Below are positions 24,255 to 48,687 of a DNA stretch of 64,000 nt, piece after piece. Under the pieces are notes generated by a model. It saw only the letters and a list, made by a program, of their open reading frames with translations. It was not told the DNA's origin and did not search any database. The position numbers and the translations under genes were made by a program. The DNA lies in contig NIVC01002811.1 of NCBI GenBank assembly GCA_002269645.1, positions 170,578 through 234,577 on the forward strand. Direction: 5' to 3'. The stretch comes from Macrostomum lignano (taxonomy: Eukaryota). Position 1 is the stretch's first letter. Every line of letters starts with the position of its first letter.

Positions 24255-25151
24255 TGAACTGTGCCGATCCGTTTGTCAAGCTGAATTCAAAAGTGTGCAT
24301 TTTATAGAATTAAAATAAAATTAACGTATTGTTTTTTAAAAAAAGTAAAAAATTATAGAACTATAAATGTGACCTAATTATTTACAAAAGGTCTGAGCAA
24401 TTTAAGAATTAATACAAATGATTGTGCAAAACAAAAAATGTCATTAAATCCACAACTGGGCGGGAGTTTAAGTTGACTGCGGCGACATAGTTTTTTTTCA
24501 AGGTTAACCTTACTTTAGAGAGTATTTATTTTATTTTTATGTGATTTTACACTTTTTAAAACATAAGAATATTTTCAGTATAGAATAAATAAAAATATTT
24601 GAGTCTCTTTTGGTAATTGCCGCGATGAATGTCATAGAGTCATGAGTCATTACATTCCTTTCAAATCGACTAGAGTCACGAGACTACTGGCTAGGCGAGG
24701 CAAAGCCAATTAAGTTGGTCGGATCGGATATAAATTTTTTAATTCAATTTTTAAGTCCAACAACTGCATCATCTCATAGCTCTTAATTTTATATATTAAG
24801 TGTATACTTTATTTTTATTGCATTTTATATTTATGTATTATAATAATATTAATATTACTAGTTCTTCTAACTTCTAATATTTTAAATATCTAAGTGATAG
24901 ATAGTCACTACTAACAAATCAGCCAGTGTTTTATATTAAAGGCTTCTAATTAAAATCAAATTTGACAGGGCCTTCATCACTTTTATATTTTTAAAAATAG
25001 AGAATAGATGTATATTTTTATTGTAAAGCTGATCGAAGGGAATATATCATATATTTTAAATTTTTAGGTTTTTGACTAAACTAAAAAATTTAACATACTA
25101 ATTAACCCTACATATATTCTATATTTCAGTGTGCTTAATAAACTGTTTCAC

Positions 25152-28100
25152 ATGGTACAAAGTAAGTATATTTGAAGAAATGCATATTGTTGTAAAATGT
25201 GGAAGAAACCCATCTTAATGCTGCAATATCAGTGCTCTTACCCTCAATCACTTCAGTTACAGAAGATCTAGTTCGGCGAAGAGCTGAACACAATGAGTGC
25301 CAGATCAGCACTTTGGAAGAGCTGTCTCTGCATCAGCAAGATATTGAAAAGTGAGCTCAAATATTTGCTTTTTAAATTATTAATTAGATTTTCAAATTTT
25401 TAACCTAATTATATTTTCTATTGACAGAATCGAACACTTGGACAAGTGGTGCAGAGATCTGAAAATTCTATACTTGCAGAGCAACCTGATTGGCAAAATT
25501 GGTGAGTTTGAAGATCCTAATTAAAATCTGATTTTTATTTTACATTCAGAGGTGCCACTATTTTCTTCAAGTGGGGTGCAATTAAAAAGAGGGAGTTCTG
25601 GCGCCACCTCCCTCAAACCAGTTCTGGCGCCACCTCCCTCAAACCAGTTCTGGCGCCACCTCCCTCAAACCAGTTCTGGCGCCACCTCCCTCAAACCAGT
25701 TCTGGCGCCACCTCCCTCAAACCAGTTCTGGCGCCACCTCCCTCAAACCAATTCTGGCGCGTTCTTGGGCCAGCTTATTTACATGTTGACACCCCAAACC
25801 CGCCGTATCCGCACGCAGAGAATGTTGGCCGGCTAAAGAAACTCGAATACTTGAACTTGGCGCTAAACAACATTGAGCGAGTGGAGAATCTCGAAGGCTG
25901 CGAGTCTCTGGCGAAGCTCGACCTGACGGTGAACTTCATCGGAGATATTCTGTCCTTGGCCAGCCTGACAGGCCTGGTGAACCTTAGGGAGCTCTACCTC
26001 ACTGGGAATCCTTGCGCCCAGTTCGAATCCTACAGAGATTTTGTTATCTGCACGTTGCCGCAGCTCAAGGTTTGACCATCTGATCTCTTCTGAGAATTTG
26101 ATGCTCCCTTCGAAATTAAGAAGTCTTCTCTTTCCTCTTTCAGTACCTTGATGGAGAAGAGATCAGCCGGTCCGAGCGAATCAAAGCTGAACAGGTGACT
26201 CTTTATTGAAGTACGAATTTGATTGGAACCTAAGTAGTACAATTCTAAATGACGTTAAAAAATCTAGTTCATTGCTAAAGTACAAGTATAATTCTAATGC
26301 TAAGGTTTTAGTGGACGCTTTGTAAGTCAAATAGACGCAAAAAGCAAATTTAAGGTCGACATTAAAGTGCAAATCTTAGTGCAGTAGCCGCTAAATGTAC
26401 AACTATAACTGGCACTAAAGTACAAAAAATGTAGACAATAAAGTAAAAATCAAGGTACACACTAGGGTACAAATCAAGGCAGAAACTAAAGTACAAGTCG
26501 AGGCAGACACTAAAGAACAAGTCAAGGCAGACACAAAAGTACAAGTCAAGGCAGACACTAGAGTAAAATCAAGGCAGATACTAAAGTAAAATCAAGGCAG
26601 ACACTAAAGTAAAATCAAGGCAGACACTAAAGTAAAATCAAGGCAGACACTAAAGTAAAATCAAGGCAGACACTAAAGTAAAATCAAGGCAGACACTAAA
26701 GTAAAATCAAGGCAGACACTAAAGTAAAATCAAGGCAGACACTAAAGTAAAATCAAGGCAGACACTAAAGTAAAATCAAGGCAGACACTAAAGTAAAATC
26801 AAGGCAGACACTAAAGTAAAATCAAGGCAGACACTAAAGTACAAGTCAAGGCAGACACTAAAGTACAAGTCAAGGCAGACACTAGAGTAAAATCAAGGCA
26901 GATACTAAAGTAAAATCAAGGCAGACACTAAAGTACAAATCAAGGTAGACGTTAAAGTACAATTCAAGACGACTCTAAAAGTACACCCGTTTTTTATTTT
27001 TTATCAGTTTCTTACAATAATTCCTATCTTTCTTATCAACTAAAACTCAGCCACCCATCATCACGCGCACAGAACTACCCGTTTATTTACGAGCGCACGC
27101 GTCAAGCGCAGGCGGACTGGGCCAGACAGCGGGAGGTCGAACGCCAGGAAGCGGCCGAGAGGCAGCGGGAACGGGAAAAACTGAAGGCTGCGGGTGCCGG
27201 ACTGGATGAACAGTGAGGCACTGGCAGATTGGGGATGATGGCAGTGAGGCACTGGCAGATTGGGGATGATGGCAGTGAGGCACTGGCAGATTGGGGATGA
27301 TGGCAGTGAGGCACTGGCAGATTGGGGATGATGGCAGTGAGGCACTGGCAGATTGGGGATGATGGCAGTGAGGCACTGGCAGATTGGGGATGATGGCAGT
27401 GAGGCACTGGCAGATTGGGGATGATGGCAGTGAGGCACTGGCAGATTGGGGATGATGGCAGTGAGGCACTGGCAGATTGGGGATGATGGCAGTGAGGCAC
27501 TGGCAGATTGGGGATGATGGCAGTGAGGCACTGGCAGATTGGGGATGATGGCAGTGAGGCACTGGCAGATTGGGGATGATGGCAGTGAGGCACTGGCAGA
27601 TTGGGGATGATGGCAGTGAGGCACTGGCAGATTGGGGATGATGGCAGTGAGGCACTGGCAGATTGGGGATGATGGCAGTGAGGCACTGGCAGATTGGGGA
27701 TGATGGCAGTGAGGCACTGGCAGATTGGGGATGATGGCAGTGAGGCACTGGCAGATTGGGGATGATGGCAGTGAGGCACTGGCAGATTGGGGATGATGGC
27801 AGTGAGGCACTGGCAGATTGGGGATGATGGCAGTGAGGCACTGGCAGTGAGGCACTGGCAGATTGGGGATGATGGCAGTGAGGCACTGGCAGATTGGGGA
27901 TGATGGCAGTGAGGCACTGGCAGATTGGGGATGATGGCAGTGAGGCACTGGCAGATTGGGGATGATGGCAGTGAGGCACTGGCAGATTGGGGATGATGGC
28001 AGTGAGGCACTGGCAGATTGGGGATGATGGCAGTGAGGCACTGGCAGTGAGGCACTGGCAGATTGGGGATGATGGCAGTGAGGCACTGGCAGATTGGGGA

Positions 28101-31777: not shown

Positions 31778-31975
31778 CAAGGACTACTCAAGTAGGGCGG
31801 GAAACTTCGTTTCTTAGAAAATTTTAGGAAGCAGGTTTTACCGATAAAAAACACAACGGAGATAGGGAGTTTTTATTTTTTTCAGCATAAAATTGTTATT
31901 GCTTTCGATATGAGGCAGACCCAATGTTTATCTTTTGATCTGTTGTGCCTTTCTTATAGCTTTATTGATATTCAA
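31778..31975. mobile_element. Degenerate left arm of MITE family A
   Basis: Starts caaggactactcaagtag and continues gtttcttagaaa, cggagatagg, gaggcagacc and gttgtgcctt, as in 11072-11270. Confidence 0.75.
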
Positions 31976-32039: not shown

Positions 32040-33550
32040 CTAAACAGCGGCAGTCCGTCGCCTGGCAGCCGACTCGGAGGCGAGGCTGCCGGCCCTGTCC
32101 AGCAGGTTGCCCGTGTTGGCGACCGAAGTTACCGCCGCAGATCTGGCGCAATAGCCGGCCATCCTGACCAGATAGTCGGCAAACTGCCTATAATCGGCAT
32201 TATCGTTGCCATAGCAACCGACCGGATAAGGCCAGCCCGACACGGAGAGCCGCTTAGCCGGCAGCAGTTGAAGAGCCGAGCCGCTCCATTCGATTGGCTC
32301 CTCGGACAGCAGGAGCTGCAGCCGCCGACTGTCCTTGGCCAAGGCGGTCAGGTGCATCGGCGAGCAGCGCATCGCCACGGCCAGCGAGCGGCCGTTGTCG
32401 GAGTCGCGGTGGCGCAGGCCCAGCAGGTGATAGGCTCGGAGCCGCAGCCACTGCCGGCCAATCAGTGGCGGCCAGTTGACGAGCGGGCTGCAGGCGGCGA
32501 TGGCGGCGGCCGGCAGGACGCGCAGCACAGAGTGAGACCACAGGCCGGCGGTTAAGTCGGCCAGTAGCCGCAGCGCCGACCATTTCTGCAGCGGGTCCGG
32601 GTCGCTGGGAGCCGTCAGCACCGCGCCAGATAGCAGCTCCGGTGCCAGGGTTGCCATAGCAACGGCTGGCCAGCAGGCCTGACCGGAGGCCACAACTAGC
32701 ACGGGCCGGTTGGGCATGGATCTGAGAGCGCGGTTTCTGAGCAGCCGGCACAGCAGGATGGAGTTCTCAGCTGCCGAGTAGGAGAATACCTGCGAGGATT
32801 AGTGAGGTGCTCAGTTGATGCTCGATTCATACTACTGACTGTTTCATTTCCTCGATTTTTATACTACTGACTACTTATTCGATTCATACTACTGACTACT
32901 CATTCGATCCATACTACTGACTATACCCTTGATTTATACTACTGACTACTCATTCGATTTATACTACTGACTACTATCTCGATTTATACTGACTGACTAC
33001 TGAATAGACTCATAGTACTGAATATTATACTTAACCGATTGACAATGACTACTCAATTGACTCATACTACTGAATACTTAACCGATTGACAATGACTACT
33101 CAATTGACTCATACTACTAATCACCAGCAGACTCACCCGCTCATCCTTAGCCGAGTGTCCGGGCGAGCCCAGACCCGGCCAGAGCGGCAGCAGCACCCGT
33201 TGGCCGGCCTCCTCCAGATAGCGGCCGAGAGTCTCAACCTCCGAGTAGCCGCGCCCAAACGGCGCCAACAGGAGGAACAGCGCGTGCTGAGACTGGTGCT
33301 TCTTAGCCGGCACCGGGCTGAGATAGTAGCGCAATTTGAACTGCACCCCGGTGTAAATAGCCCTGTGCAGCCAAGCGTCCGAGGTTACCAGGGTCTCGCT
33401 CAGCGGGCCCAGGTGCTGCAGGTATTCGCTGGCAGTTTTCACTGTTGCAGGGCCGCCAGTTCCATTGGAATTGTTGGTCTCGGGTCCGGCCGTGCTGGCG
33501 AGCTGACGGCGCCAGCAAAAGCGGCGCCACGAGAGGAGCCGACGCGGTAA
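32040..33550 (-). CDS. Divergent alpha/beta-hydrolase-fold protein (ABHD-like); exons 33550-33137 and 32789-32040; no genomic in-frame ATG
   Basis: Two GC-rich exons are joined by a phase-0 GT/AG intron. RVLLPLWPGLGSPGHS...FSYSAAENSILL...RPVLVVASG...APELLSGAVLTAP follows the motif order of ABHD hydrolases. The family assignment is by eye only. Confidence 0.6.
32820..33120. repeat. Degenerate ~22-bp repeat in the hydrolase-like gene intron
   Basis: Recurring cgattcatactactgactac. Confidence 0.75.
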
Positions 33551-33684
33551 CTGAAGGATTGGGTTTTTCAGCGATTGGAATACGTAATATGAACACTTAT
33601 AGCAGGTATTCTTTAGTTATAGCATAACAGGTAATACATGGACCTAAAAATACTCATGGAACTAAGGACGCATATTGCCTAACG

Positions 33685-34240
33685 ACAGCCTGATGGACCT
33701 AAAGACGGGCTGATGGACCTAAAAACGGGCTGATGGACCTAAAAACGGGCTGATGGACCTAAAAACGGGCTGATGGACCTAAAAACGGGCTGATGGACCT
33801 AACGACAGGCTGATGGACCCAACGACAGGCTGATGGACCCAACGACAGGCTGATGGACCTAACGACAGGCTGATGGACCAAACGACAGGCTGATGGACCT
33901 AACGACAGGCTGATGGACCCAACGACAGGCTGATGGACCCAACGACAGGCTGATGGACCTAACGACAGGCTGATGGACCTAACGACAGGCTGATGGACCA
34001 AACGACAGGCTGATGGACCAAACGACAGGCTGATGGACCAAACGACAGGCTGATGGACCTAACGACAGGCTGATGGACCAAACGACAGGCTGATGGACCA
34101 AACGACAGGCTGATGGACCAAACGACAGGCTGATGGACCAAACGACAGGCTGATGGACCAAACGACAGGCTGATGGACCAAACGACAGGCTGATGGACCT
34201 AACGACAGGCTGATGGACCTAACGACAGGCTGATGGAATT
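33685..34240. repeat. 20-bp minisatellite (aacgacaggctgatggacct)
   Basis: Direct tandem units. Confidence 0.95.
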
Positions 34241-34799: not shown

Positions 34800-34876
<77 letters not shown>

Positions 34877-34887
34877 GACAGACAGAC

Positions 34888-34966
<79 letters not shown>

Positions 34967-35025
34967 CTAAGACAGGCAGACACAGACAAACAGGCAGACA
35001 GACAGACAGACAGTGAGACAGACAC
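34800..35025. repeat. (CAGA)n microsatellite
   Basis: Direct tandem units. Confidence 0.97.
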
Positions 35026-35704: not shown

Positions 35705-36190
35705 TCAGGTCAGGGCAGCACAGGCTCTACTCTCGGGGTCACGCCAGGTCAGGGCAGCACATGCTCTACTCTCGGGGTCACGCCAGGTCAGGGCAGCACA
35801 GGCTCTACTCTCGGGGTCACGCCAGGTCAGGGCAGCACAGGCTCTACTCTCGGGGTCACCCCAGGTCAGGGCAGCACATGCTCTACTCTCGGGGTCACGC
35901 CAGGTCAGGGCAGCACAGGCTCTACTCTCGGGGTCACGCCAGGTCAGGGCAGCACAGGCTCTACTCTCGGGTTACGCCAGGTCAGGGCAGCACAGGCTCT
36001 ACTCTCGGGGTCACGCCAGGTCAGGGCAGCACAGGCTCTACTCTCGGGGTTACGCCAGGTCAGGGCAGCACAGGCTCTACTCTCGGGGTCACGCCAGGTC
36101 AGGGCAGCACAGGCTCTACTCTCGGGGTCACGCCAGGTCAGGGCAGCACAGGCTCTACTCTCGGGGTCACGCCAGGTCAGGGCAGAGTCT
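35705..36190. repeat. 39-bp minisatellite starting at the PLEKHM2 stop codon
   Basis: Unit ggtcacgccaggtcagggcagcacaggctctactctcgg. Confidence 0.95.
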
Positions 36191-39100
36191 GTTCGCACAG
36201 CAGCGTCAGCGCCCTGGCTGAGGCGCGAAGTCCGCCGGCCCGACCTGGCGGCAGGCGGCGCAGCGGCAGCCTGGGCAGCAGGTGGCGCAGCAGGCGGCCC
36301 AGCCGGTTCCGCTCTTCGGCGGAGCCCAGGCAGATCAGCCAGGTGGTGGGAGGGCGCAGCCGCAGGGTCAGATAAGTGGGGTAGTGCGGATCGAAGCCAA
36401 TACTGCGGATCTCGTCTAAAGTGACTAGATCGACCGTTTCTACCTGGAAGTTTAGAATGAGAAACAGCTCAACTGCAGCTATAGAATGCTCAGATTGCAG
36501 CTCAACTGCAGCTATAGAATGCTCAGATTGCAGCTCAACTGCAGCTATAGAATGCTCAGATTGCAGCTCAACTACAGCTATAGAATGCTCAGATTGCAGC
36601 TCAACTGCAGCTATAGAATGCTCAGATTGCAGCTCAACTGCAGCTATAGAATGCTCAGATTGCAGCTCAACTACAGCTATAGAATGCTCAGATTGCAGCT
36701 CAACTGCAGCTATAGAATGCTCAGATTGCAGCTCAACTACAGCTATAGAATGCTCAGATTGCAGCTCAACTACAGCTATAGAATGCTCAGATTGCAGCTC
36801 AACTACTACAGCTATAGAATGCTCAGATTGCAGCTCAACTACTACAGCTATAGAATGCTCAGATTGCAGCTCAACTACTACAGCTATAGAATGCTCAGAT
36901 TGCAGCTCAACTACAACTATAGAATGCTCAGATTGCAGCTCAACTACAACTATAGAATGCTCAGATTGCAGCTCAACTACAGCTATAGAATGCTCAGATT
37001 GCAGCTCAACTACTACAGCTATAGAATGCTCAGATTGCAGCTCAACTACTACAGCTATAGAATGCTCAGATTGCAGCTCAACTACAACTATAGAATGCTC
37101 AGATTGCAGCTCAACTACTACAGCTATAGAATGCTCAGATTGCAGCTCAACTACAACTATAGAATGCTCAGATTGCAGCTCAACTACAACTATAGAATGC
37201 TCAGATTGCAGCTCAACTACAGCTTTAGAAAGCCACTATAATACGTACAGCTCAAATGCTACTTCACAGGAGCCCCAGATCCCGCCCAAGAGCTGCACTC
37301 ACCGTCCAGACACCGGGCACCTCGGCGCCCAGAGCGAGGCCATGCTCAGTAACCAACAGCGTCAGAATCTTTGAAGTGGCGCCGCTGCCGCTGCCGCCAG
37401 CGCCGCCGCGCACCAGAGCGGTGCAAATTGCCTGTTTCCAAGTGACAGCGCTCTGGCCGCCGATCATGACGGTGTCACCGCCGGCCAGCGTCACCTCCAC
37501 TACGGTGCCATTGTCGGCGTCCTGAACCAGGCAGCATCCCCGACAGCCGGCCAGCGACCACTGCGGCCCGCCGTCGCCCGGAGCGGCCAGCAGCCAGCCG
37601 CCGGAGAGCAGCAGTCGTCGGCGACTCCAATCGCCGCGCGGCGGCCGCACAGGCAGCCGGGCATCGAGCAGCACCTCGTGCGTAGTTAGCGCGTAGTGCA
37701 TCGGCGCGCCAGACAAATTGGGCGCCTCGGCGCGCAGCCATTTGCCCAGGCCGACATCTTGGCAGGGCGAGCCGCGGAACAGCGGCACAGTTGGCAGGCA
37801 GCGGCGCAAGTCGCGGGTCGCCGATTCGCCGATCGACTGGTCGACGCAGGCGACAAAATGGCGGGCGGAGCGGACCACGCCGACCAGGTGAAGCAGGTGG
37901 CCCTGGCCGCTCTGGCACACGTGATCGAGCGAATCCGGCCGCCATTCGCACAGCCTGCGTTAATGCGGATGGAATTCTACTACTTTTAGTAGAGTATGCG
38001 AGTTATCCGTGATCTACTGCTGTAATATTTAGAGTAATACTGCCACGTCAACCCTCCGGAATCCCCCGCTGCCAGACCCTCAACCCTCCGGAATTCCCCG
38101 CTGCCAGGCCCTCAACCCTCCGGAATCCCCCGCTGCCAGGCCCTCAACCCTCCGGAATCCTCCGCTGCCAGGCCCTGAACCCTCCGGAATCCTCCGCTGC
38201 CAGGCCCTCAACCCTCCGGAATCCCCCGCTGCCAGGTCCTCAACCCTCCGGAATCCTCCGCTGCCAGGCCCTCAACCCTCCGGAATCCTCCGCTGCCAGG
38301 CCCTGAACCCTCCGGAATCCTCCGCTGCCAGGCCCTCAACCCTCCGGAATCCCCCGCTGCCAGGTCCTCAACCCTCCGGAATCCTCCGCTGCCAGGCCCT
38401 CAACCCTCCGGAATCCTCCGCTGCCACCACCTCCTTGAAATCCTACAGTCCCAAATGTACTACAAGTTGATTACACGGTAAAACTGTTAACAATCAACAA
38501 TGAAAACAAAGGTGACAGAAGCAGACTCCGCACCTGGACAGAGAACCGGAAGACACCAGTCTAACCCGGCCAGGCGACAGGCACAGCAGGCAGGCCGCCC
38601 AGGCGTCGCCTCGCCACCACAGAGCTCTATAAGCTGCGCTGAGTGTCGCATCGCCCAACGTGTCCTGAACCTGACGCAACGGCAACGCGTAGTCGCTAGA
38701 GAGAGCCGCCGGTTCAAAAGGATTTGGCGCATCTGATGTCACTGAATCGTCCGACAAAGATTCATCAGTGTCAGTGTCAGCATCCGTTTTAGCTTTGGCA
38801 CTGGCTGCATCCGCATCCGCATCCGCATCCGCAATCGCATTTACATCCGTATAGGCATTCGCTTCATCTGAATATGTGTACATATCAGCATCCGCATCTG
38901 CATCCGCATCAGCATCCGCATCAGCATCCGCATCAGCATCCGCATCCTCATCAGCTCGCAAAGCCGCTTCGGCCTCTTGTAGTTCGTCGGCCAGCGACCT
39001 GGCCAAACTGGCGGGCTGCTGCTGGCCGGACCGCAAGAGTTGGTTGCCCGACGCCGCCGCCGCCGACATGGACAACGGCATCGACATTGGCAGCGGAAGA

Positions 39101-40582
39101 GACGGTCGAGGATGTCGCTGCTGTTGTTGCCGATTTCTGGACGATCGAACATCGCCATTCAGTTTGACAGGCTCAGCAGCAGGGGGCGCAGGTTGGCTGT
39201 CAGGTTGGCTGTCAGGTAAGCTGTCAGGTTCATCGCCATCGAGCCGCTGCAGCTGGTTGTGATTGTCGGCTAGCAGGCCAGCGGCAACGGGAAAACAGTC
39301 GGCATCGTCGTCGGAGTCCGCCAGCGCCAGCCGATAATAGTTGGATGACGAGCCACCGTTGACTGCCTGCTGCTGTTTCTGGCGATGCGTCAGCTTGCGC
39401 TCAACAACCAGACTGTCTTCCTGCGACATCGCGATACTGTTGAAATCGGACGACAGGTCCTGCTGCTGCGGCGGCTCGTCTGGCTGCTCGTCAGTCGGAG
39501 GCATTGTTGACGAAGATCTAGACGACGACGGCGGCTGTTGATCCTGAGAGGAGCCAGTTGACGACGCCTGCGGATGGCTGTTGGCCTCGGCTGGGTCAGG
39601 CAGAGCGGAGAGTGAGCCAGACGAGCTGGACTCGGTGTCGCCGCGGTGCCGATCGCGCCGGGCCGGGTCCTGACAGCCGACGTCCAAGAAGGTGACGGTG
39701 GCCCAGGACACGCAGGACAGGTCGCAGTGCTCCAGGCCGGCCAGCAGGGTCTGCAATAGGCGGGTTCTGTTGGCATTGGCCAGCAGGGCGTGCGGCTCGT
39801 AGAATTTGCGTAGCAGGGGGACATCGCCGGCAAGGCTGGCCAGATAGGACTCGAGTAGAGACTCGCTGAGAGCCCGGAACAGCCAGGCGCGAGCTCTGCC
39901 GTGATTGGTTAGGAGGTACCTGGGCAAAGATAAGGGATTGAACGGGTACACTGCTGAGGCATGAGCCTGACTGTGCATACGTGCAAACTGAGGAATATAA
40001 GCGTAGAATGGATATTACAAGCTGTGAGGTGTGTACATTGTGTGTGTACATTGGGGGGTAGAGAGGTGTGGCTGTAGGGCGGAAGATTGTGTGTACATTG
40101 AGGGGTAGAGAAGTGTGGGCGAGGGCGGAAGATTGTGTGTACATTGAGGGGTAGAGAGGTGTGGGCGAGGGCGGAAAATTGTGTGTACATTGAGGGGTAG
40201 AGAGGTGTGGGCCAGGGCGGAAAATTGTGTGTACATTGAGGGGTAGAGAGGTGTGGGTGAGGGCGGAAAATTGTGTGTACATTGAGTGGTAGAGAGGTGT
40301 GGCCTCAATGCAGGAGAATATTGGAAGGCAAAGGGCTTTAAGCTAGAGTTACCTGCTGGCTTTAATCTCCCGAATAACATCTTTATGGCTGAGCTCCACA
40401 AGCAGGTCCCAGTAGCCGCGCGACGGTGTCCTTAGGCCGTCAAGAAATACTCGATCTAGACAGTGACAGACTTTTTGCACGCAGGGATTGTCGCTGGTTA
40501 GAGCGATGCTCTCGGTGCAGATGCACTGGATCTCTTTGAGGGCGACGCTAAGCCGCTGCAAATGAGCGTCCTTGATGGACAT
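36177..40582 (-). CDS. PLEKHM2: PLEKHM2/SKIP-like RUN and PH domain lysosomal adaptor, about 844 aa; exons 40582-40353, 39919-38534, 37954-37303, 36443-36177
   Basis: The N-terminal RUN domain (CHCLDRVFLDGL...GYWDLL...TNHGRARAWLFRALSESLLESYL) parallels SKIP. It is followed by an acidic low-complexity linker and a C-terminal PH-like region (TWLICLGSAEERNRL). Phases are consistent (2535 nt). Confidence 0.85.
36465..37225. repeat. 33-36-bp minisatellite, PLEKHM2 intron 3
   Basis: Unit cagctcaactgcagctatagaatgctcagattg. Confidence 0.96.
38050..38425. repeat. 32-bp minisatellite, PLEKHM2 intron 2
   Basis: Unit ccctcaaccctccggaatcctccgctgccagg. Confidence 0.95.
40030..40300. repeat. 46-bp minisatellite, PLEKHM2 intron 1
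   Basis: gtgtacattg recurs every 46 bp. Confidence 0.92.
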
Positions 40583-40764
40583 TTTCGCGTTGAGCGCGAA
40601 AAAGTGAAACAATTGTTGCTTAACCAAATTTTGCTGGCATCATGCAGTTTTATGAAAAAAACTTAAGAGTGAAAATTATGTAATACAATTTTTAATATAC
40701 TGTGGTTTTGCCTACCAAATCTACCAATGTGCACGACTTAGCTCGTATAACTAACATTTTTAAA

Positions 40765-41885
40765 CAGTTCAGGCCATAGACATAGCAACTGCATCCAGAC
40801 CATGAGGCACTAGCTGACCTGCTCAACAACAACAGTTCAGGCCATAGACATAGCAACTACATCCAGAACATGAGGCACTGGCTGACCTGCTCAACAACAA
40901 CAGTTCAGGCCATAGACATAGCAACTGCATCCAGACCATGAGGCACTGGCTGACCTGCTCAACAACAACAGTTCAGGCCATAGACATAGCAACTGCATCC
41001 AGAACATGAGGCACTGGCTGACCTGCTCAACAACAACAGTTCAGGCCATAGACATAGCAACTGCATCCAGAACATGAGGCACTGGCTGACCTGCTCAACA
41101 ACAACAGTTCAGGCCATAGACATAGCAACTGCATCCAGAACATGAGGCACTGGCTGACCTGCTCAACAACAACAGTTCAGGCCATAGACATAGCAACTGC
41201 ATCCAGAACATGAGGCACTGGCTGACCTGCTCAACAACAACAGTTCAGGCCATAGACATAGCAACTGCATCCAGACCATGAGGCACTGGCTGACCTGCTC
41301 AACAACAACAGTTCAGGCCATAGACATAGCAACTGCATCCAGACCATGAGGCACTGGCTGACCTGCTCAACAACAACAGTTCAGGCCATAGACATAGCAA
41401 CTGCATCCAGACCATGAGGCACTGGCTGACCTGCTCAACAACAACAGTTCAGGCCATAGACATAGCAACTGCATCCAGACCATGAGGCACTAGCTGACCT
41501 GCTCAACAACAACAGTTCAGGCCATAGACATAGCAACTGCATCCAGAACATGAGGCACTGGCTGACCTGCTCAACAACAACAGTTCAGGCCATAGACATA
41601 GCAACTGCATCCAGACCATGAGGCACTAGCTGACCTGCTCAACAACAACAGTTCAGGCCATAGACATAGCAACTACATCCAGACCATGAGGCACTGGCTG
41701 ACCTGCTCAACAACAACAGTTCAGGCCATAGACATAGCAACTGCATCCAGACCATGAGGCACTGGCTGACCTGCTCAACAACAACAGTTCAGGCCATAGA
41801 CATAGCAACTACATCCAGAACATGAGGCACTGGCTGACCTGCTCAACAACAACAGTTCAGGCCATAGACATAGCAACTGCATCCG
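40765..41885. repeat. 68-bp tandem repeat, about 16 copies, between NTE and PLEKHM2
   Basis: catgaggcac recurs every 68 bp. Confidence 0.97.
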
Positions 41886-42524
41886 TCATTGTGAATTTAA
41901 GTAAAAAAATACATAATACAAACTAGAACAGCTTGGAAGCCAAAAATAACTTATATATTTATCAAAATGAAAGCGTGAAACGAAAAAAGCAATTCAGTCA
42001 TAAAGTTCTAAAATAGTCTGAATTTTTAAAAAACTAAACTAGGACATGGTTATTTGATATACGAATCAATCAAGAGAATGAATACTAATCAAATGGATTA
42101 GTAATGCAGAATGTTACATGGAATTCGCAGACCCGCACTACTAGATAAGAATGCAAGTAGAGAAACCAATACAATGCTGTGCATACGCTAGCAACTAAGC
42201 CAGTTGGTATCGAATCAAACGGTTAGATGAGCAGTAAAACCATCTACCTAACATTTTTTCTAAGAAATGCCGAGCAGTGTAACTATATGACAGCGCAGTA
42301 CTTGAGTACATTGGCTTAATAACGGCTAGTGTTTTCATAATCTACGAGTGGTATATAGATAATAAACATGTTAATCAATCATCTACTCGTAGCTAGATTT
42401 AGACTAGAAGTCAAGCAAATGTTCATTATAAAACAATCAAGCACTTCTTTGTTAAAGGCAGGTGAAAGCGCATTGAAAGCCGATTTTAAGACTACTTCCG
42501 GTAGGTTGCATGTAATACACTAAC

Positions 42525-42900
42525 CGAACAGCTGATGAAGCAGCTGATCAAACAGCTGACCAAACAGCTGATCAAACAGCTGATCAAACAGCTGATCAAA
42601 CAGCTGACCAACACCTAATCAAACAGCTGACCAACAGCTAATCAAACAGCTGACCAACAGCTGATCAAACAGCTGACCAACAGCTGATCAAACAGCTGAC
42701 CAACAGCTGATCAAACAGCTGACCAACAGCTGATCAAACAGCTGATCAAACAGCTGACCAACAGCTGATCAAACAGCTGACTAACAGCTGATCAAACAGC
42801 TGACCAACAGCTGATCAAACAGCTGACCAACAGCTGATCAAACAGCTGACCAACAGCTGATCAAACAGCTGACCAACAGCTGATCAAACAGCTGACCAAT
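42525..42900. repeat. 11-12-bp minisatellite built on CAGCTG
   Basis: Unit pair aaacagctgaccaacagctgatc. Confidence 0.93.
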
Positions 42901-43025
42901 ACAGTTGATATTTTTAAGGATAATATGTCTTTTAAAAATCGGCCCTCAAAAATATTGACAAAGTAGTTTGAAATTTGCATCACTGTTAAAAAAAGAAATT
43001 AAAAAATAATTTCCCCAAACAAAAG

Positions 43026-48687
<5,662 letters not shown>

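What the first reader, a model, noticed from the sequence alone, without database searches (positions are those of the whole stretch)
33490..33640. Hydrolase-like gene: an SL-donated Met would create a mitochondrial-type presequence
Seen: the frame is open from a clean acceptor (aatccttcag| at 33551-33552, minus strand, phase 0), with no in-frame ATG back to the upstream in-frame stop. The first residues are LPRRLLSWRRFCWRRQLAST, which are Arg-rich, free of acidic residues and amphipathic. Inference: M+LPRRLLSWRR... looks like a real N-terminus (a mitochondrial targeting peptide). This independently suggests the acceptor is the start of the mRNA rather than an internal exon.
Basis: partly seen in the sequence, partly recalled or inferred. 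Interest (0 to 1): 0.7.

Follow-up and report, generated by a model that had tools for sequence, protein, structure and literature searches.

The report
Spliced-leader start codon, flatworm hydrolase-like gene
This Macrostomum lignano gene has no start codon of its own and almost certainly takes its first Met from the ATG ending the trans-spliced leader, a known flatworm mechanism; the Arg-rich N-terminus could be a mitochondrial signal, but that is unproven.

Summary
The sequence facts are correct. On the minus strand a CTTCAG acceptor ends at 33551. The frame is open in phase 0 from 33550. An in-frame TAA lies at 33619-33617 with no ATG between it and the acceptor. The next in-frame ATG is codon 163, inside the conserved domain.

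The window is Macrostomum lignano scaffold NIVC01002811.1 and the gene is BOX15_Mlig005851g2. All three genomic copies are annotated "partial", with the CDS starting 0, 3 or 6 nt after this acceptor. The M. lignano spliced leader ends in ATG. The annotation pipeline cut transcripts at SL-read peaks and trimmed the SL, which explains the "partial" flag. No credible upstream ATG exon exists.

An SL-donated initiator Met is therefore well supported, though indirectly: no junction reads could be examined. It is a known flatworm mechanism (Cheng et al. 2006).

The mitochondrial presequence is only plausible. There are six Arg and no acidic residue in the first 24 residues, plus an R-3-like cleavage motif. 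However, the hydrophobic moment is no better than shuffled sequence. No orthologous N-terminus and no localisation predictor were available.

The protein is restricted to this lineage and has only sub-threshold alpha/beta-hydrolase similarity.

Verdict: an ordinary new instance of a known kind, of low interest.

The parts
33551..33556 (-). 3' splice acceptor CTTCAG (AG at 33552-33551), proposed SL trans-splice site
   Evidence: It matches the [T/C]TNCAG motif reported for M. lignano trans-splice acceptors (PMC8629364). The annotated CDS starts of the three gene copies lie 0, 3 and 6 nt downstream. GC content steps from 34% in the 100 nt upstream to 67% in the 100 nt downstream.
33617..33619 (-). 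Nearest upstream in-frame stop (TAA); no ATG between it and the acceptor
33500..33550 (-). First 17 codons, LPRRLLSWRRFCWRRQL: an Arg-rich, acid-free segment and candidate mitochondrial presequence once the SL Met is added. A candidate MPP R-3 site, R16-Q-L|A-S, follows L18.
   Evidence: GC3 is 0.80 in this frame, against 0.78 CDS-wide. The motifs were read by inspection. AF2 places a helix at residues 3-19, but at pLDDT about 31-35.
33137..33550 (-). Coding exon 1 (138 codons, phase 0, no in-frame ATG)
   Evidence: The donor is GTGAGT at 33136.
32790..33136 (-). Intron (GT...AG) filled with 25/47-nt minisatellites
   Evidence: Repeat copy number differs between gene copies.
32040..32789 (-). 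Coding exon 2, with stop TAG at 32042-32040. It contains the conserved VASGQACWP, TAGLWSHS, GLRHRxSDN and GWPxPxGC blocks.
   Evidence: The annotated CDS end maps to 32040.
31961..31966 (-). AATAAA, likely poly(A) signal about 75 nt after the stop
   Evidence: by inspection.
33557..34237 (-). Outron-side non-coding DNA: about 120 nt of unique AT-rich sequence, then a 20-nt minisatellite (28 copies, 33678-34237)
   Evidence: There are 28 copies in g3 and 54 in g1.

Best explanation
This is the 5' end of the Macrostomum lignano gene Mlig005851.g2, a two-exon gene for a lineage-restricted protein of 387 genomically encoded residues with faint alpha/beta-hydrolase similarity.

The gene encodes no initiator codon. 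The pre-mRNA is SL trans-spliced at the CTTCAG acceptor ending at 33551. The 35-nt M. lignano spliced leader ends in AUG, so the junction reads ...UUGCAUG|UUACCG.... This places the AUG in frame and makes the 388-residue protein M-LPRRLLSWRRFCWRRQLAST...

Shown here: the sequence anatomy, the identity of the organism and gene, the 5'-partial annotation of all three copies at this acceptor, and the absence of any alternative AUG.

Taken from the literature: the SL ends in ATG, annotated 5' ends were set by SL reads, and flatworm SL AUGs can initiate translation.

Inferred: the SL is really joined here and its AUG is really used.

Secondary and weaker (about 0.45): the Arg-rich, acid-free first ~18 residues act as a cleavable mitochondrial matrix-targeting presequence.
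For: Organism and gene:
- The translation is 100% identical to PAA55104.1, BOX15_Mlig005851g2, 'partial'.
- The 21.5-kb locus fetched around that gene from scaffold NIVC01002811.1 is an exact substring of the window.

Anatomy:
- The acceptor, phase 0, the upstream TAA and the lack of an in-frame ATG before codon 163 are all confirmed.
- Codon 163 lies inside the region matching alpha/beta-hydrolase profiles (residues ~84-237), so it cannot be the start.

SL and motif:
- The SL is CGGTCTCTTACTGCGAAGACTCAATTTATTGCATG. The trans-acceptor motif is [T/C]TNCAG (PMC8629364).

Annotation:
- Copies g1, g2 and g3 are all 5'-partial. They begin RRLL, PRRLL and LPRRLL, which is 6, 3 and 0 nt after the acceptor.
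- TBONE cut transcripts at SL-read peaks after trimming the SL, and TransDecoder then called ORFs (PMC5730564).
- Internal control: the neighbouring LRR gene's annotated 5' end sits 1 nt inside an exon that follows a TTTCAG acceptor.

No alternative start:
- Between 33551 and 36400 there are 40 phase-0 ATG..|GT candidates. None scores above 3 of 5 on a simple donor check. The best-scoring lie in 27-56% GC DNA and encode low-complexity peptides. None lies at 34.6-34.8 kb.
- The upstream DNA consists of minisatellites whose copy number varies between gene copies.

Coding signal from the first codon:
- GC3 is 0.80 in codons 1-25, against 0.78 for the whole CDS.
- g1 versus g2 shows 5 synonymous and 5 non-synonymous changes, roughly dN/dS 0.3. 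All copies keep the ORF and the acceptor.

Mechanism precedent:
- Cheng et al. [quoted passage not shown]

For the presequence:
- 6 Arg and 0 Asp/Glu in the first 20 residues, with the first acidic residue at 25.
- The stretch is unique within the protein.
- By inspection there is a W9-R-R-F-C13 phi-x-x-phi-phi motif and an R16-Q-L|A-S R-3 site.
- A low-complexity linker (TAGPETNNSNGTGGPATVKT) follows before the domain.
Against: - No SL-junction read or SL-bearing transcript contig for this gene could be examined. The protein collections hold no M-extended or RNA-derived version.
- The three annotated starts differ by 0, 3 and 6 nt rather than coinciding exactly.
- 'Partial' in this annotation only means that the ORF is open to the trimmed 5' end. 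The neighbouring LRR gene is also open to its 5' end although it has its own ATG eight codons in.
- In parasitic flatworms, 3' acceptors are often shared between cis- and trans-splicing (PMC12582326).
- The SL AUG context is weak by inspection (U at -3, U at +4).

Against the presequence specifically:
- The hydrophobic moment is not above shuffles, since 65% reach it.
- Arg-rich, acid-free windows occur in about 1.2% of ORF windows in this GC-rich DNA.
- Nothing shows conservation of the N-terminus, because the only non-lignano relative covers the C-terminal two thirds.
- Both structure models are unusable, with pLDDT 31-35.
Confidence: 0.75

Rival explanations
1. The SL-donated Met is real, but the Arg-rich N-terminus is not a mitochondrial presequence. 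It could be a short basic, disordered extension produced by GC-rich (CGN-rich) sequence, or another kind of basic signal such as a nucleolar or RNA-binding patch.
For: - The hydrophobic moment is 0.29, and 65% of same-composition shuffles reach it.
- The composition is found in about 1.2% of 20-residue windows in this window's long ORFs.
- GC2 is 0.72 in codons 1-25, which reflects CGN and GCN codons.
- No orthologous N-terminus shows conservation.
- One of the few differences between copies (F to C at codon 11) lies here.
Against: - The stretch lies exactly at the N-terminus and nowhere else in the protein.
- It lacks acidic residues for 24 positions.
- It alternates Arg pairs with Leu, Trp and Phe.
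- It has a plausible R-3 cleavage site, followed by a flexible linker (by inspection).
- These are the classical compositional hallmarks of matrix presequences.
Confidence: 0.35
2. The acceptor at 33551 is an internal cis-splice acceptor, or one shared between cis and trans use. The true start codon would then lie in an unannotated upstream exon, so LPRR... is internal sequence in at least some mRNAs.
For: - Phase-0 acceptors followed by open frames are common for internal exons.
- Flatworm acceptors are often shared between cis- and trans-splicing (PMC12582326).
- The upstream same-strand gene ends only 2.6 kb away, at 36177.
- No read-level data were available.
Against: - None of the three transcriptome-based gene models has an upstream exon.
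- No upstream ATG..|GT candidate scores above 3 of 5 on a simple donor check, and the best-scoring lie in 27-56% GC DNA. There are none at 34.6-34.8 kb.
- The intervening DNA is largely minisatellite (about 1.26 kb of the 2.6 kb) that varies in copy number between gene copies.
- The upstream gene ends in its own TGA.
Confidence: 0.12
3. The locus is not translated from an AUG at all. It would be a decaying or non-coding duplicate family, or it would use a near-cognate start such as ACG codon 20, GTG codon 37 or CTG codon 44.
For: - There is no genomic ATG.
- The family is tiny and lineage-restricted.
- The catalytic motifs are degenerate.
- Structure prediction fails.
Against: - The 387-codon ORF is intact across two exons in all three copies, with roughly dN/dS 0.3.
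- A relative that is 51% identical keeps long identical blocks.
- GC3 is coding-like from codon 1.
- An in-frame AUG is supplied by the known SL, so no unusual initiation is needed.
Confidence: 0.05

Closest known systems
Flatworm mRNAs whose initiator Met is the 3'-terminal AUG of the spliced leader (Cheng, Cohen, Ndegwa and Davis 2006, J Biol Chem 281:733; called 'slORFs' in PMC9851317)
   Same: The SL ends in AUG. The acceptor is in frame with the main ORF. The mRNA body lacks a usable AUG, so the ORF depends on the SL.
   Different: The class was described experimentally in Schistosoma mansoni. Here the species is the free-living M. lignano, the case is inferred from genome and annotation only, and the gene is lineage-restricted. 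I found no paper listing this gene; a text search for Mlig005851 returned nothing.
Trans-splice-site choice that changes N-terminal targeting signals in trypanosomes (Nilsson et al. 2010, PMC2916883)
   Same: SL trans-splicing determines which N-terminus a protein receives, and hence potentially which organelle-targeting signal.
   Different: In trypanosomes the SL gives no AUG, and alternative acceptors include or exclude a genomic AUG. Here the AUG itself comes from the SL, and no alternative acceptor use is shown.
Alpha/beta-hydrolase fold proteins (Pfam Abhydrolase_6 and Abhydrolase_1; PDB 3qit CurM thioesterase, 9jux carboxylesterase)
   Same: Weak profile matches cover the strand-3 to strand-6 region. 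Ser173 aligns with the nucleophile Ser of GHSMG in 3qit.
   Different: All matches fall below the curated cut-offs: 21.9 bits against 26.3, and 14-16 bits against 25.8. The elbow reads V-A-S-G-Q rather than G-x-S-x-G. The HG oxyanion motif reads AP. No conserved catalytic His was found. No reliable model was obtained.

Membership tests
SL-AUG-initiated flatworm mRNA (Cheng 2006 class / slORF) | The organism has an SL RNA whose leader ends in AUG | tested here: met
   The window is M. lignano. Its 35-nt SL ends ...TTGCATG (PMC8629364). No SL RNA gene lies in the window itself.
SL-AUG-initiated flatworm mRNA (Cheng 2006 class / slORF) | The SL is joined to this acceptor in mature mRNA (junction reads or cDNA) | tested here: inconclusive
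   The evidence is indirect only. The three copies are annotated 5'-partial starting 0-6 nt after the acceptor. The pipeline sets 5' ends from SL reads. The acceptor fits [T/C]TNCAG. No reads or SL-bearing contigs were obtainable.
SL-AUG-initiated flatworm mRNA (Cheng 2006 class / slORF) | The SL AUG is in frame with the main ORF, with no intervening stop | tested here: met
   The exon starts in phase 0 at 33550, and 387 codons are open to TAG at 32042-32040.
SL-AUG-initiated flatworm mRNA (Cheng 2006 class / slORF) | No genomic AUG can encode the conserved protein | tested here: met
   The first in-frame ATG is codon 163, inside the hydrolase-like core. No credible upstream ATG exon exists.
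SL-AUG-initiated flatworm mRNA (Cheng 2006 class / slORF) | Translation actually initiates at the SL AUG | not testable with these tools
   This needs ribosome profiling, reporter assays or proteomics.
Mitochondrial matrix-targeting presequence | An N-terminal stretch of 15-50 residues, rich in Arg/Lys, lacking Asp/Glu, with hydrophobic and hydroxylated residues | tested here: met
   6 Arg, 0 Asp/Glu, 9 hydrophobic and 2 Ser/Thr in the first 20 residues. The first acidic residue is residue 25. The stretch is unique within the protein.
Mitochondrial matrix-targeting presequence | An amphipathic helix (segregated basic and hydrophobic faces) | tested here: inconclusive
   The hydrophobic moment is 0.29 over 18 residues and 0.49 over 11 residues. 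65% of shuffles reach the 18-residue value. AF2 draws a helix at 3-19, but at pLDDT about 31-35.
Mitochondrial matrix-targeting presequence | An MPP cleavage motif (R-2, R-3 or R-10) and a TOM20 phi-x-x-phi-phi motif | tested here: inconclusive
   By inspection only: R16-Q-L|A-S fits R-3, and W9-R-R-F-C13 fits phi-x-x-phi-phi. Both are short, degenerate motifs, and no chance estimate was made.
Mitochondrial matrix-targeting presequence | A positive call by trained predictors, or demonstrated import or processing | not testable with these tools
   TargetP, MitoFates and localisation experiments were not available.
Mitochondrial matrix-targeting presequence | Presequence character conserved in orthologues | not testable with these tools
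   The only relative outside M. lignano (P0008, Logan SRR31628394) lacks the N-terminal third.
Alpha/beta-hydrolase fold superfamily | A profile match above the curated threshold | tested here: not met
   Abhydrolase_6 scores 21.9 bits against a 26.3 cut-off (E=3e-4, core fragment only). Abhydrolase_1 scores 14-16 bits against 25.8. PDB 3qit gives E=0.026.
Alpha/beta-hydrolase fold superfamily | A Ser-Asp-His triad with a G-x-S-x-G nucleophile elbow | tested here: inconclusive
   Ser173 aligns with the 3qit nucleophile, and VASGQACWP is conserved in P0008. However, both elbow Gly residues are replaced and no conserved His was found (WPYP versus WPHP).
Alpha/beta-hydrolase fold superfamily | The alpha/beta-hydrolase three-dimensional fold | tested here: inconclusive
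   Two AF2 runs gave pLDDT 34.9 and 31.2, so no fold search was justified.

The most novel reading that the evidence does not exclude
A young, Macrostomum-restricted hydrolase-like gene has no start codon of its own. It would be both translatable and mitochondrially targeted only because SL trans-splicing supplies the Met in front of an Arg-rich exon start. Trans-splicing would then be an obligatory step in making an organelle-targeted protein. It could also be a switch, if the acceptor is also used in cis or left unspliced.
Probability: 0.35. Interest if true: 0.35.

Novelty: new member of a known kind. Interest (0 to 1): 0.2.

Why it matters
The value is mainly for annotation. In the public M. 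lignano annotation, ORFs that depend on the SL AUG appear as "partial" proteins lacking their Met. N-terminal features such as targeting peptides are therefore missed or mis-scored. Adding the SL-derived Met back to trans-spliced, in-frame, ATG-less gene models would complete this gene. It would also give correct input for localisation predictors. If the presequence is functional, this would be a clean example of an SL-supplied Met heading a targeting peptide. The mechanism itself has been established since 2006.

Tried and rejected
1. Direct evidence from transcript assemblies. Three word-index protein searches, one exhaustive HMMER search and cluster listings found no M-extended or RNA-derived version. 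They returned only three GenBank models, four older UniProt models of M. lignano (two of them frameshifted), and one Logan contig.

2. Orthologous N-termini. The Logan contig L003 (SRR31628394) covers only the C-terminal two thirds. It looks genomic or unspliced, with an acceptor-like cag at 160-162. It therefore gives no test of presequence conservation.

3. Structure. AF2 on the single sequence and on a 3-sequence alignment gave pLDDT 34.9 and 31.2. No fold search was run, because the matches would be meaningless.

4. A recalled precedent. I thought S. mansoni phytochelatin synthase gained a mitochondrial leader through the SL. The paper says its transcripts are not trans-spliced (PMC3101182), so I dropped it.

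5. No credible candidate was found.

6. An SL RNA gene or any Rfam family in the window. None was found.

7. Cheng et al. 2006 itself is not held in the library. Its figures are quoted second-hand from PMC9851317.

8. A text search for the gene id returned nothing.

Full report
**What is in the sequence**

Read on the minus strand...aaaaacccaatccttcag ends at 33551. The next base, 33550, opens TTA CCG CGT CGG CTC CTC TCG TGG CGC CGC TTT TGC TGG CGC CGT CAG CTC GCC AGC ACG. This translates to LPRRLLSWRRFCWRRQLAST.

- The nearest upstream in-frame stop is TAA at 33619-33617. The 22 codons between it and the acceptor hold no ATG.
- Exon 1 runs 33550-33137 (138 codons, donor GTGAGT).
- A 347-nt intron full of 25/47-nt minisatellites ends in ...ctcgcag at 32790.
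- Exon 2 runs 32789-32040 and ends in TAG.
- AATAAA follows about 75 nt after the stop.
- The 387-codon ORF has no in-frame ATG before codon 163. The only ATGs in exon 1 are in frame +1.

**Organism and gene**

The translation is 100% identical to GenBank PAA55104.1, [quoted passage not shown]. A 21.5-kb stretch of scaffold NIVC01002811.1 (assembly GCA_002269645.1) is an exact substring of the window.

M. lignano carries two more copies, g3 (L001, identical CDS) and g1 (L002, 5 synonymous and 5 non-synonymous differences). All three are annotated "partial". They begin LPRRLL (g3), PRRLL (g2, this window) and RRLL (g1), which is 0, 3 and 6 nt after the same acceptor. None of the models has an upstream exon.

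**Why the SL-donated start is the best explanation**

- The M. lignano spliced leader is a single 35-nt sequence, CGGTCTCTTACTGCGAAGACTCAATTTATTGCATG, which ends in ATG. About 30% of genes receive it. The top motif at trans-splice acceptors is [T/C]TNCAG (PMC8629364). The site here is CTTCAG.
- The Mlig_3_7 annotation was built by trimming the SL from reads, mapping them, cutting transcripts at the SL peaks (TBONE) and then calling ORFs with TransDecoder (PMC5730564). An ORF that depends on the SL AUG must come out of that pipeline as a 5'-partial CDS starting at the acceptor, which is what is seen in triplicate.
- An internal control lies in the same window. The LRR/DNAAF11-like gene on the plus strand has its annotated 5' end at 25131, one base into the exon that follows a TTTCAG acceptor.
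- The composition switches at the acceptor from 34% GC to 67% GC. GC3 in codons 1-25 (0.80) equals the CDS-wide value of 0.78.
- Flatworm SL AUGs are known to serve as initiators. Cheng et al. 2006 reported the SL AUG in frame in 28% of trans-spliced S. mansoni mRNAs and required by more than 40 cDNAs. This is quoted from PMC9851317. PMC12582326, PMC7653826 and PMC5832876 also describe it.

**The internal-exon rival**

I enumerated every ATG between 33551 and 36400 on the minus strand that stays open to a phase-0 GT. There are 40 candidates. None scores above 3 of 5 on a simple donor check. The best-scoring lie in 27-56% GC DNA and encode AT-rich, low-complexity peptides.

- About half of the 2.6 kb up to the stop codon of the upstream same-strand gene (TGA at 36179-36177) is tandem repeat. 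It holds a 20-mer x28, (AGAC)n and a 39-mer x12.
- The repeat copy numbers differ between the gene copies. The 20-mer has 28 copies in g3 and 54 in g1.
- This rival is not excluded, because flatworm acceptors are often shared between cis- and trans-splicing. I give it about 0.12.

**What could not be shown**

I could not see a single SL-junction read.

- The protein collections contain no M-extended or transcript-derived version of this protein.
- "Partial" in this annotation means only that the ORF is open to the trimmed 5' end. The LRR neighbour is also open to its 5' end although it has its own ATG eight codons in.
- What makes the present gene different is the complete lack of any usable ATG.

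**The mitochondrial-presequence claim**

With the SL Met added, the N-terminus is MLPRRLLSWRRFCWRRQLASTAGPETNN...

In favour:
- There are six Arg and no acidic residue in the first 20 residues. The first acidic residue is at position 25.
- No comparable stretch occurs elsewhere in the protein.
- By inspection there is a phi-x-x-phi-phi element (W9-R-R-F-C13) and an R-3-type processing site (R16-Q-L|A-S).
- A Gly/Asn/Thr/Pro linker follows before the folded part.

Against, or missing:
- The 18-residue hydrophobic moment at 100 degrees is 0.29, and 65% of shuffles of the same residues reach it. The "amphipathic" label adds nothing beyond composition.
- Basic acid-free windows of this strength make up about 1.2% of 20-residue windows in this window's long six-frame ORFs.
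- No trained predictor was available.
- The helix that AF2 draws at residues 3-19 has pLDDT of about 31-35.
- No orthologous N-terminus exists in the databases I could search.

I put mitochondrial import at roughly 0.45. That argument is weak, even though its conclusion is supported on other grounds.

**The protein**

An exhaustive HMMER search of 1.84 billion representatives found only M. lignano entries plus one 1,026-bp Logan contig. That contig is P0008 (SRR31628394), about 50% identical and covering residues 183-363. Conserved blocks (VASGQACWP, TAGLWSHS, GLRHRxSDN, GWPxPxGC) show a real protein under constraint.

The alpha/beta-hydrolase similarity is consistent but below threshold:
- Abhydrolase_6: E=3e-4 and 21.9 bits, against a 26.3 cut-off, for the core fragment only.
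- Abhydrolase_1: 14-16 bits, against a 25.8 cut-off.
- PDB 3qit: E=0.026, with its GHSMG Ser aligned to Ser173 of V-A-S-G-Q.
- The HG motif reads AP, and no conserved catalytic His was found.

"Hydrolase-like" is a fair description. "Hydrolase" is not established.

**Comparison with known systems and verdict**

The gene works like the SL-AUG-initiated mRNAs of schistosomes. Of that class's defining features:
- Three are met here: the SL ends in AUG, the AUG is in frame with the ORF, and there is no genomic AUG.
- One is only indirectly supported: the SL junction at this site.
- One is untestable with these tools: initiation at the SL AUG.

It is a new, unremarkable member of a known kind. Its practical value is the note that such genes are deposited as "partial" proteins without their Met. 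The mitochondrial targeting idea is reasonable but untested. Interest is low, at about 0.2.

Noticed in passing
window 25110-25160 (+ strand): The LRR/DNAAF11(LRRC6)-like gene has its annotated 5' end at 25131, one base into an exon that follows a TATTTCAG acceptor. If it is SL trans-spliced there, the SL ATG would open a 3-codon uORF (ATG TGT GCT TAA) ending 11 nt before the gene's own ATG at 25152. Its deposited CDS appears to include 7 codons of 5' UTR (VLNKLFH) because the frame is open to the trimmed end.
   Followed up: partly
window 33678-34237; L001 4800-5358; L002 4783-5867: A 20-nt minisatellite (AGGTCCATCAGCCTGTCGTT) lies about 130 nt upstream of the acceptor. It has 28 copies in this copy and in g3, but 54 in g1. 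Its function, if any, is unknown. It sits in the presumed outron.
   Followed up: partly
window 32858-33118 (intron); L002 6495-7043: The single intron is almost entirely 25/47/52-nt tandem repeats. It is about 350 nt in g2 and g3 and about 690 nt in g1.
   Followed up: partly
window 34802-35024, 35706-36185, 36465-37230: An (AGAC)n microsatellite (57 copies), a 39-nt array (12 copies) starting just after the stop codon of the upstream 862-aa gene, and a 33-nt array (23 copies) inside that gene's range. The last keeps a long open frame on the opposite (+) strand, which is a repeat artefact.
   Followed up: no
window 48687, 43331 and 57069 (- strand): These are other [T/C]TNCAG sites followed by at least 100 open phase-0 codons with no in-frame ATG back to the previous stop. 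At 48687 the frame starts [20 protein letters not shown], which looks like a signal peptide, and its first ATG is at codon 103. They may be internal exons or further SL-AUG-dependent starts.
   Followed up: no
UniProt A0A1I8FPM5 and A0A1I8FHQ1 (P0002, P0003): These older ML2-assembly models of the same gene family are frameshifted translations that read through the acceptor (NPIIQLPRRLL...). They carry misleading names ('Exostosin domain-containing', 'Pecanex-like').
   Followed up: partly
L003 1-1026 (Logan SRR31628394): This is the only relative outside M. lignano. It is about 50% identical over the C-terminal two thirds and conserves ASGQACWP. An acceptor-like cag at 160-162 suggests an intron that M. 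lignano lacks. The source species is unknown to me.
   Followed up: partly
window 36177-43547 (- strand): Upstream on the same strand lie an 862-aa gene with no Pfam hit (40636-36177) and the 3' end of a 1208-aa NTE/patatin (PNPLA6-like) gene ending at 43026. After subtracting tandem repeats, the gap to Mlig005851.g2 is about 1.4 kb, just over the 1-kb operon threshold used for M. lignano.
   Followed up: no
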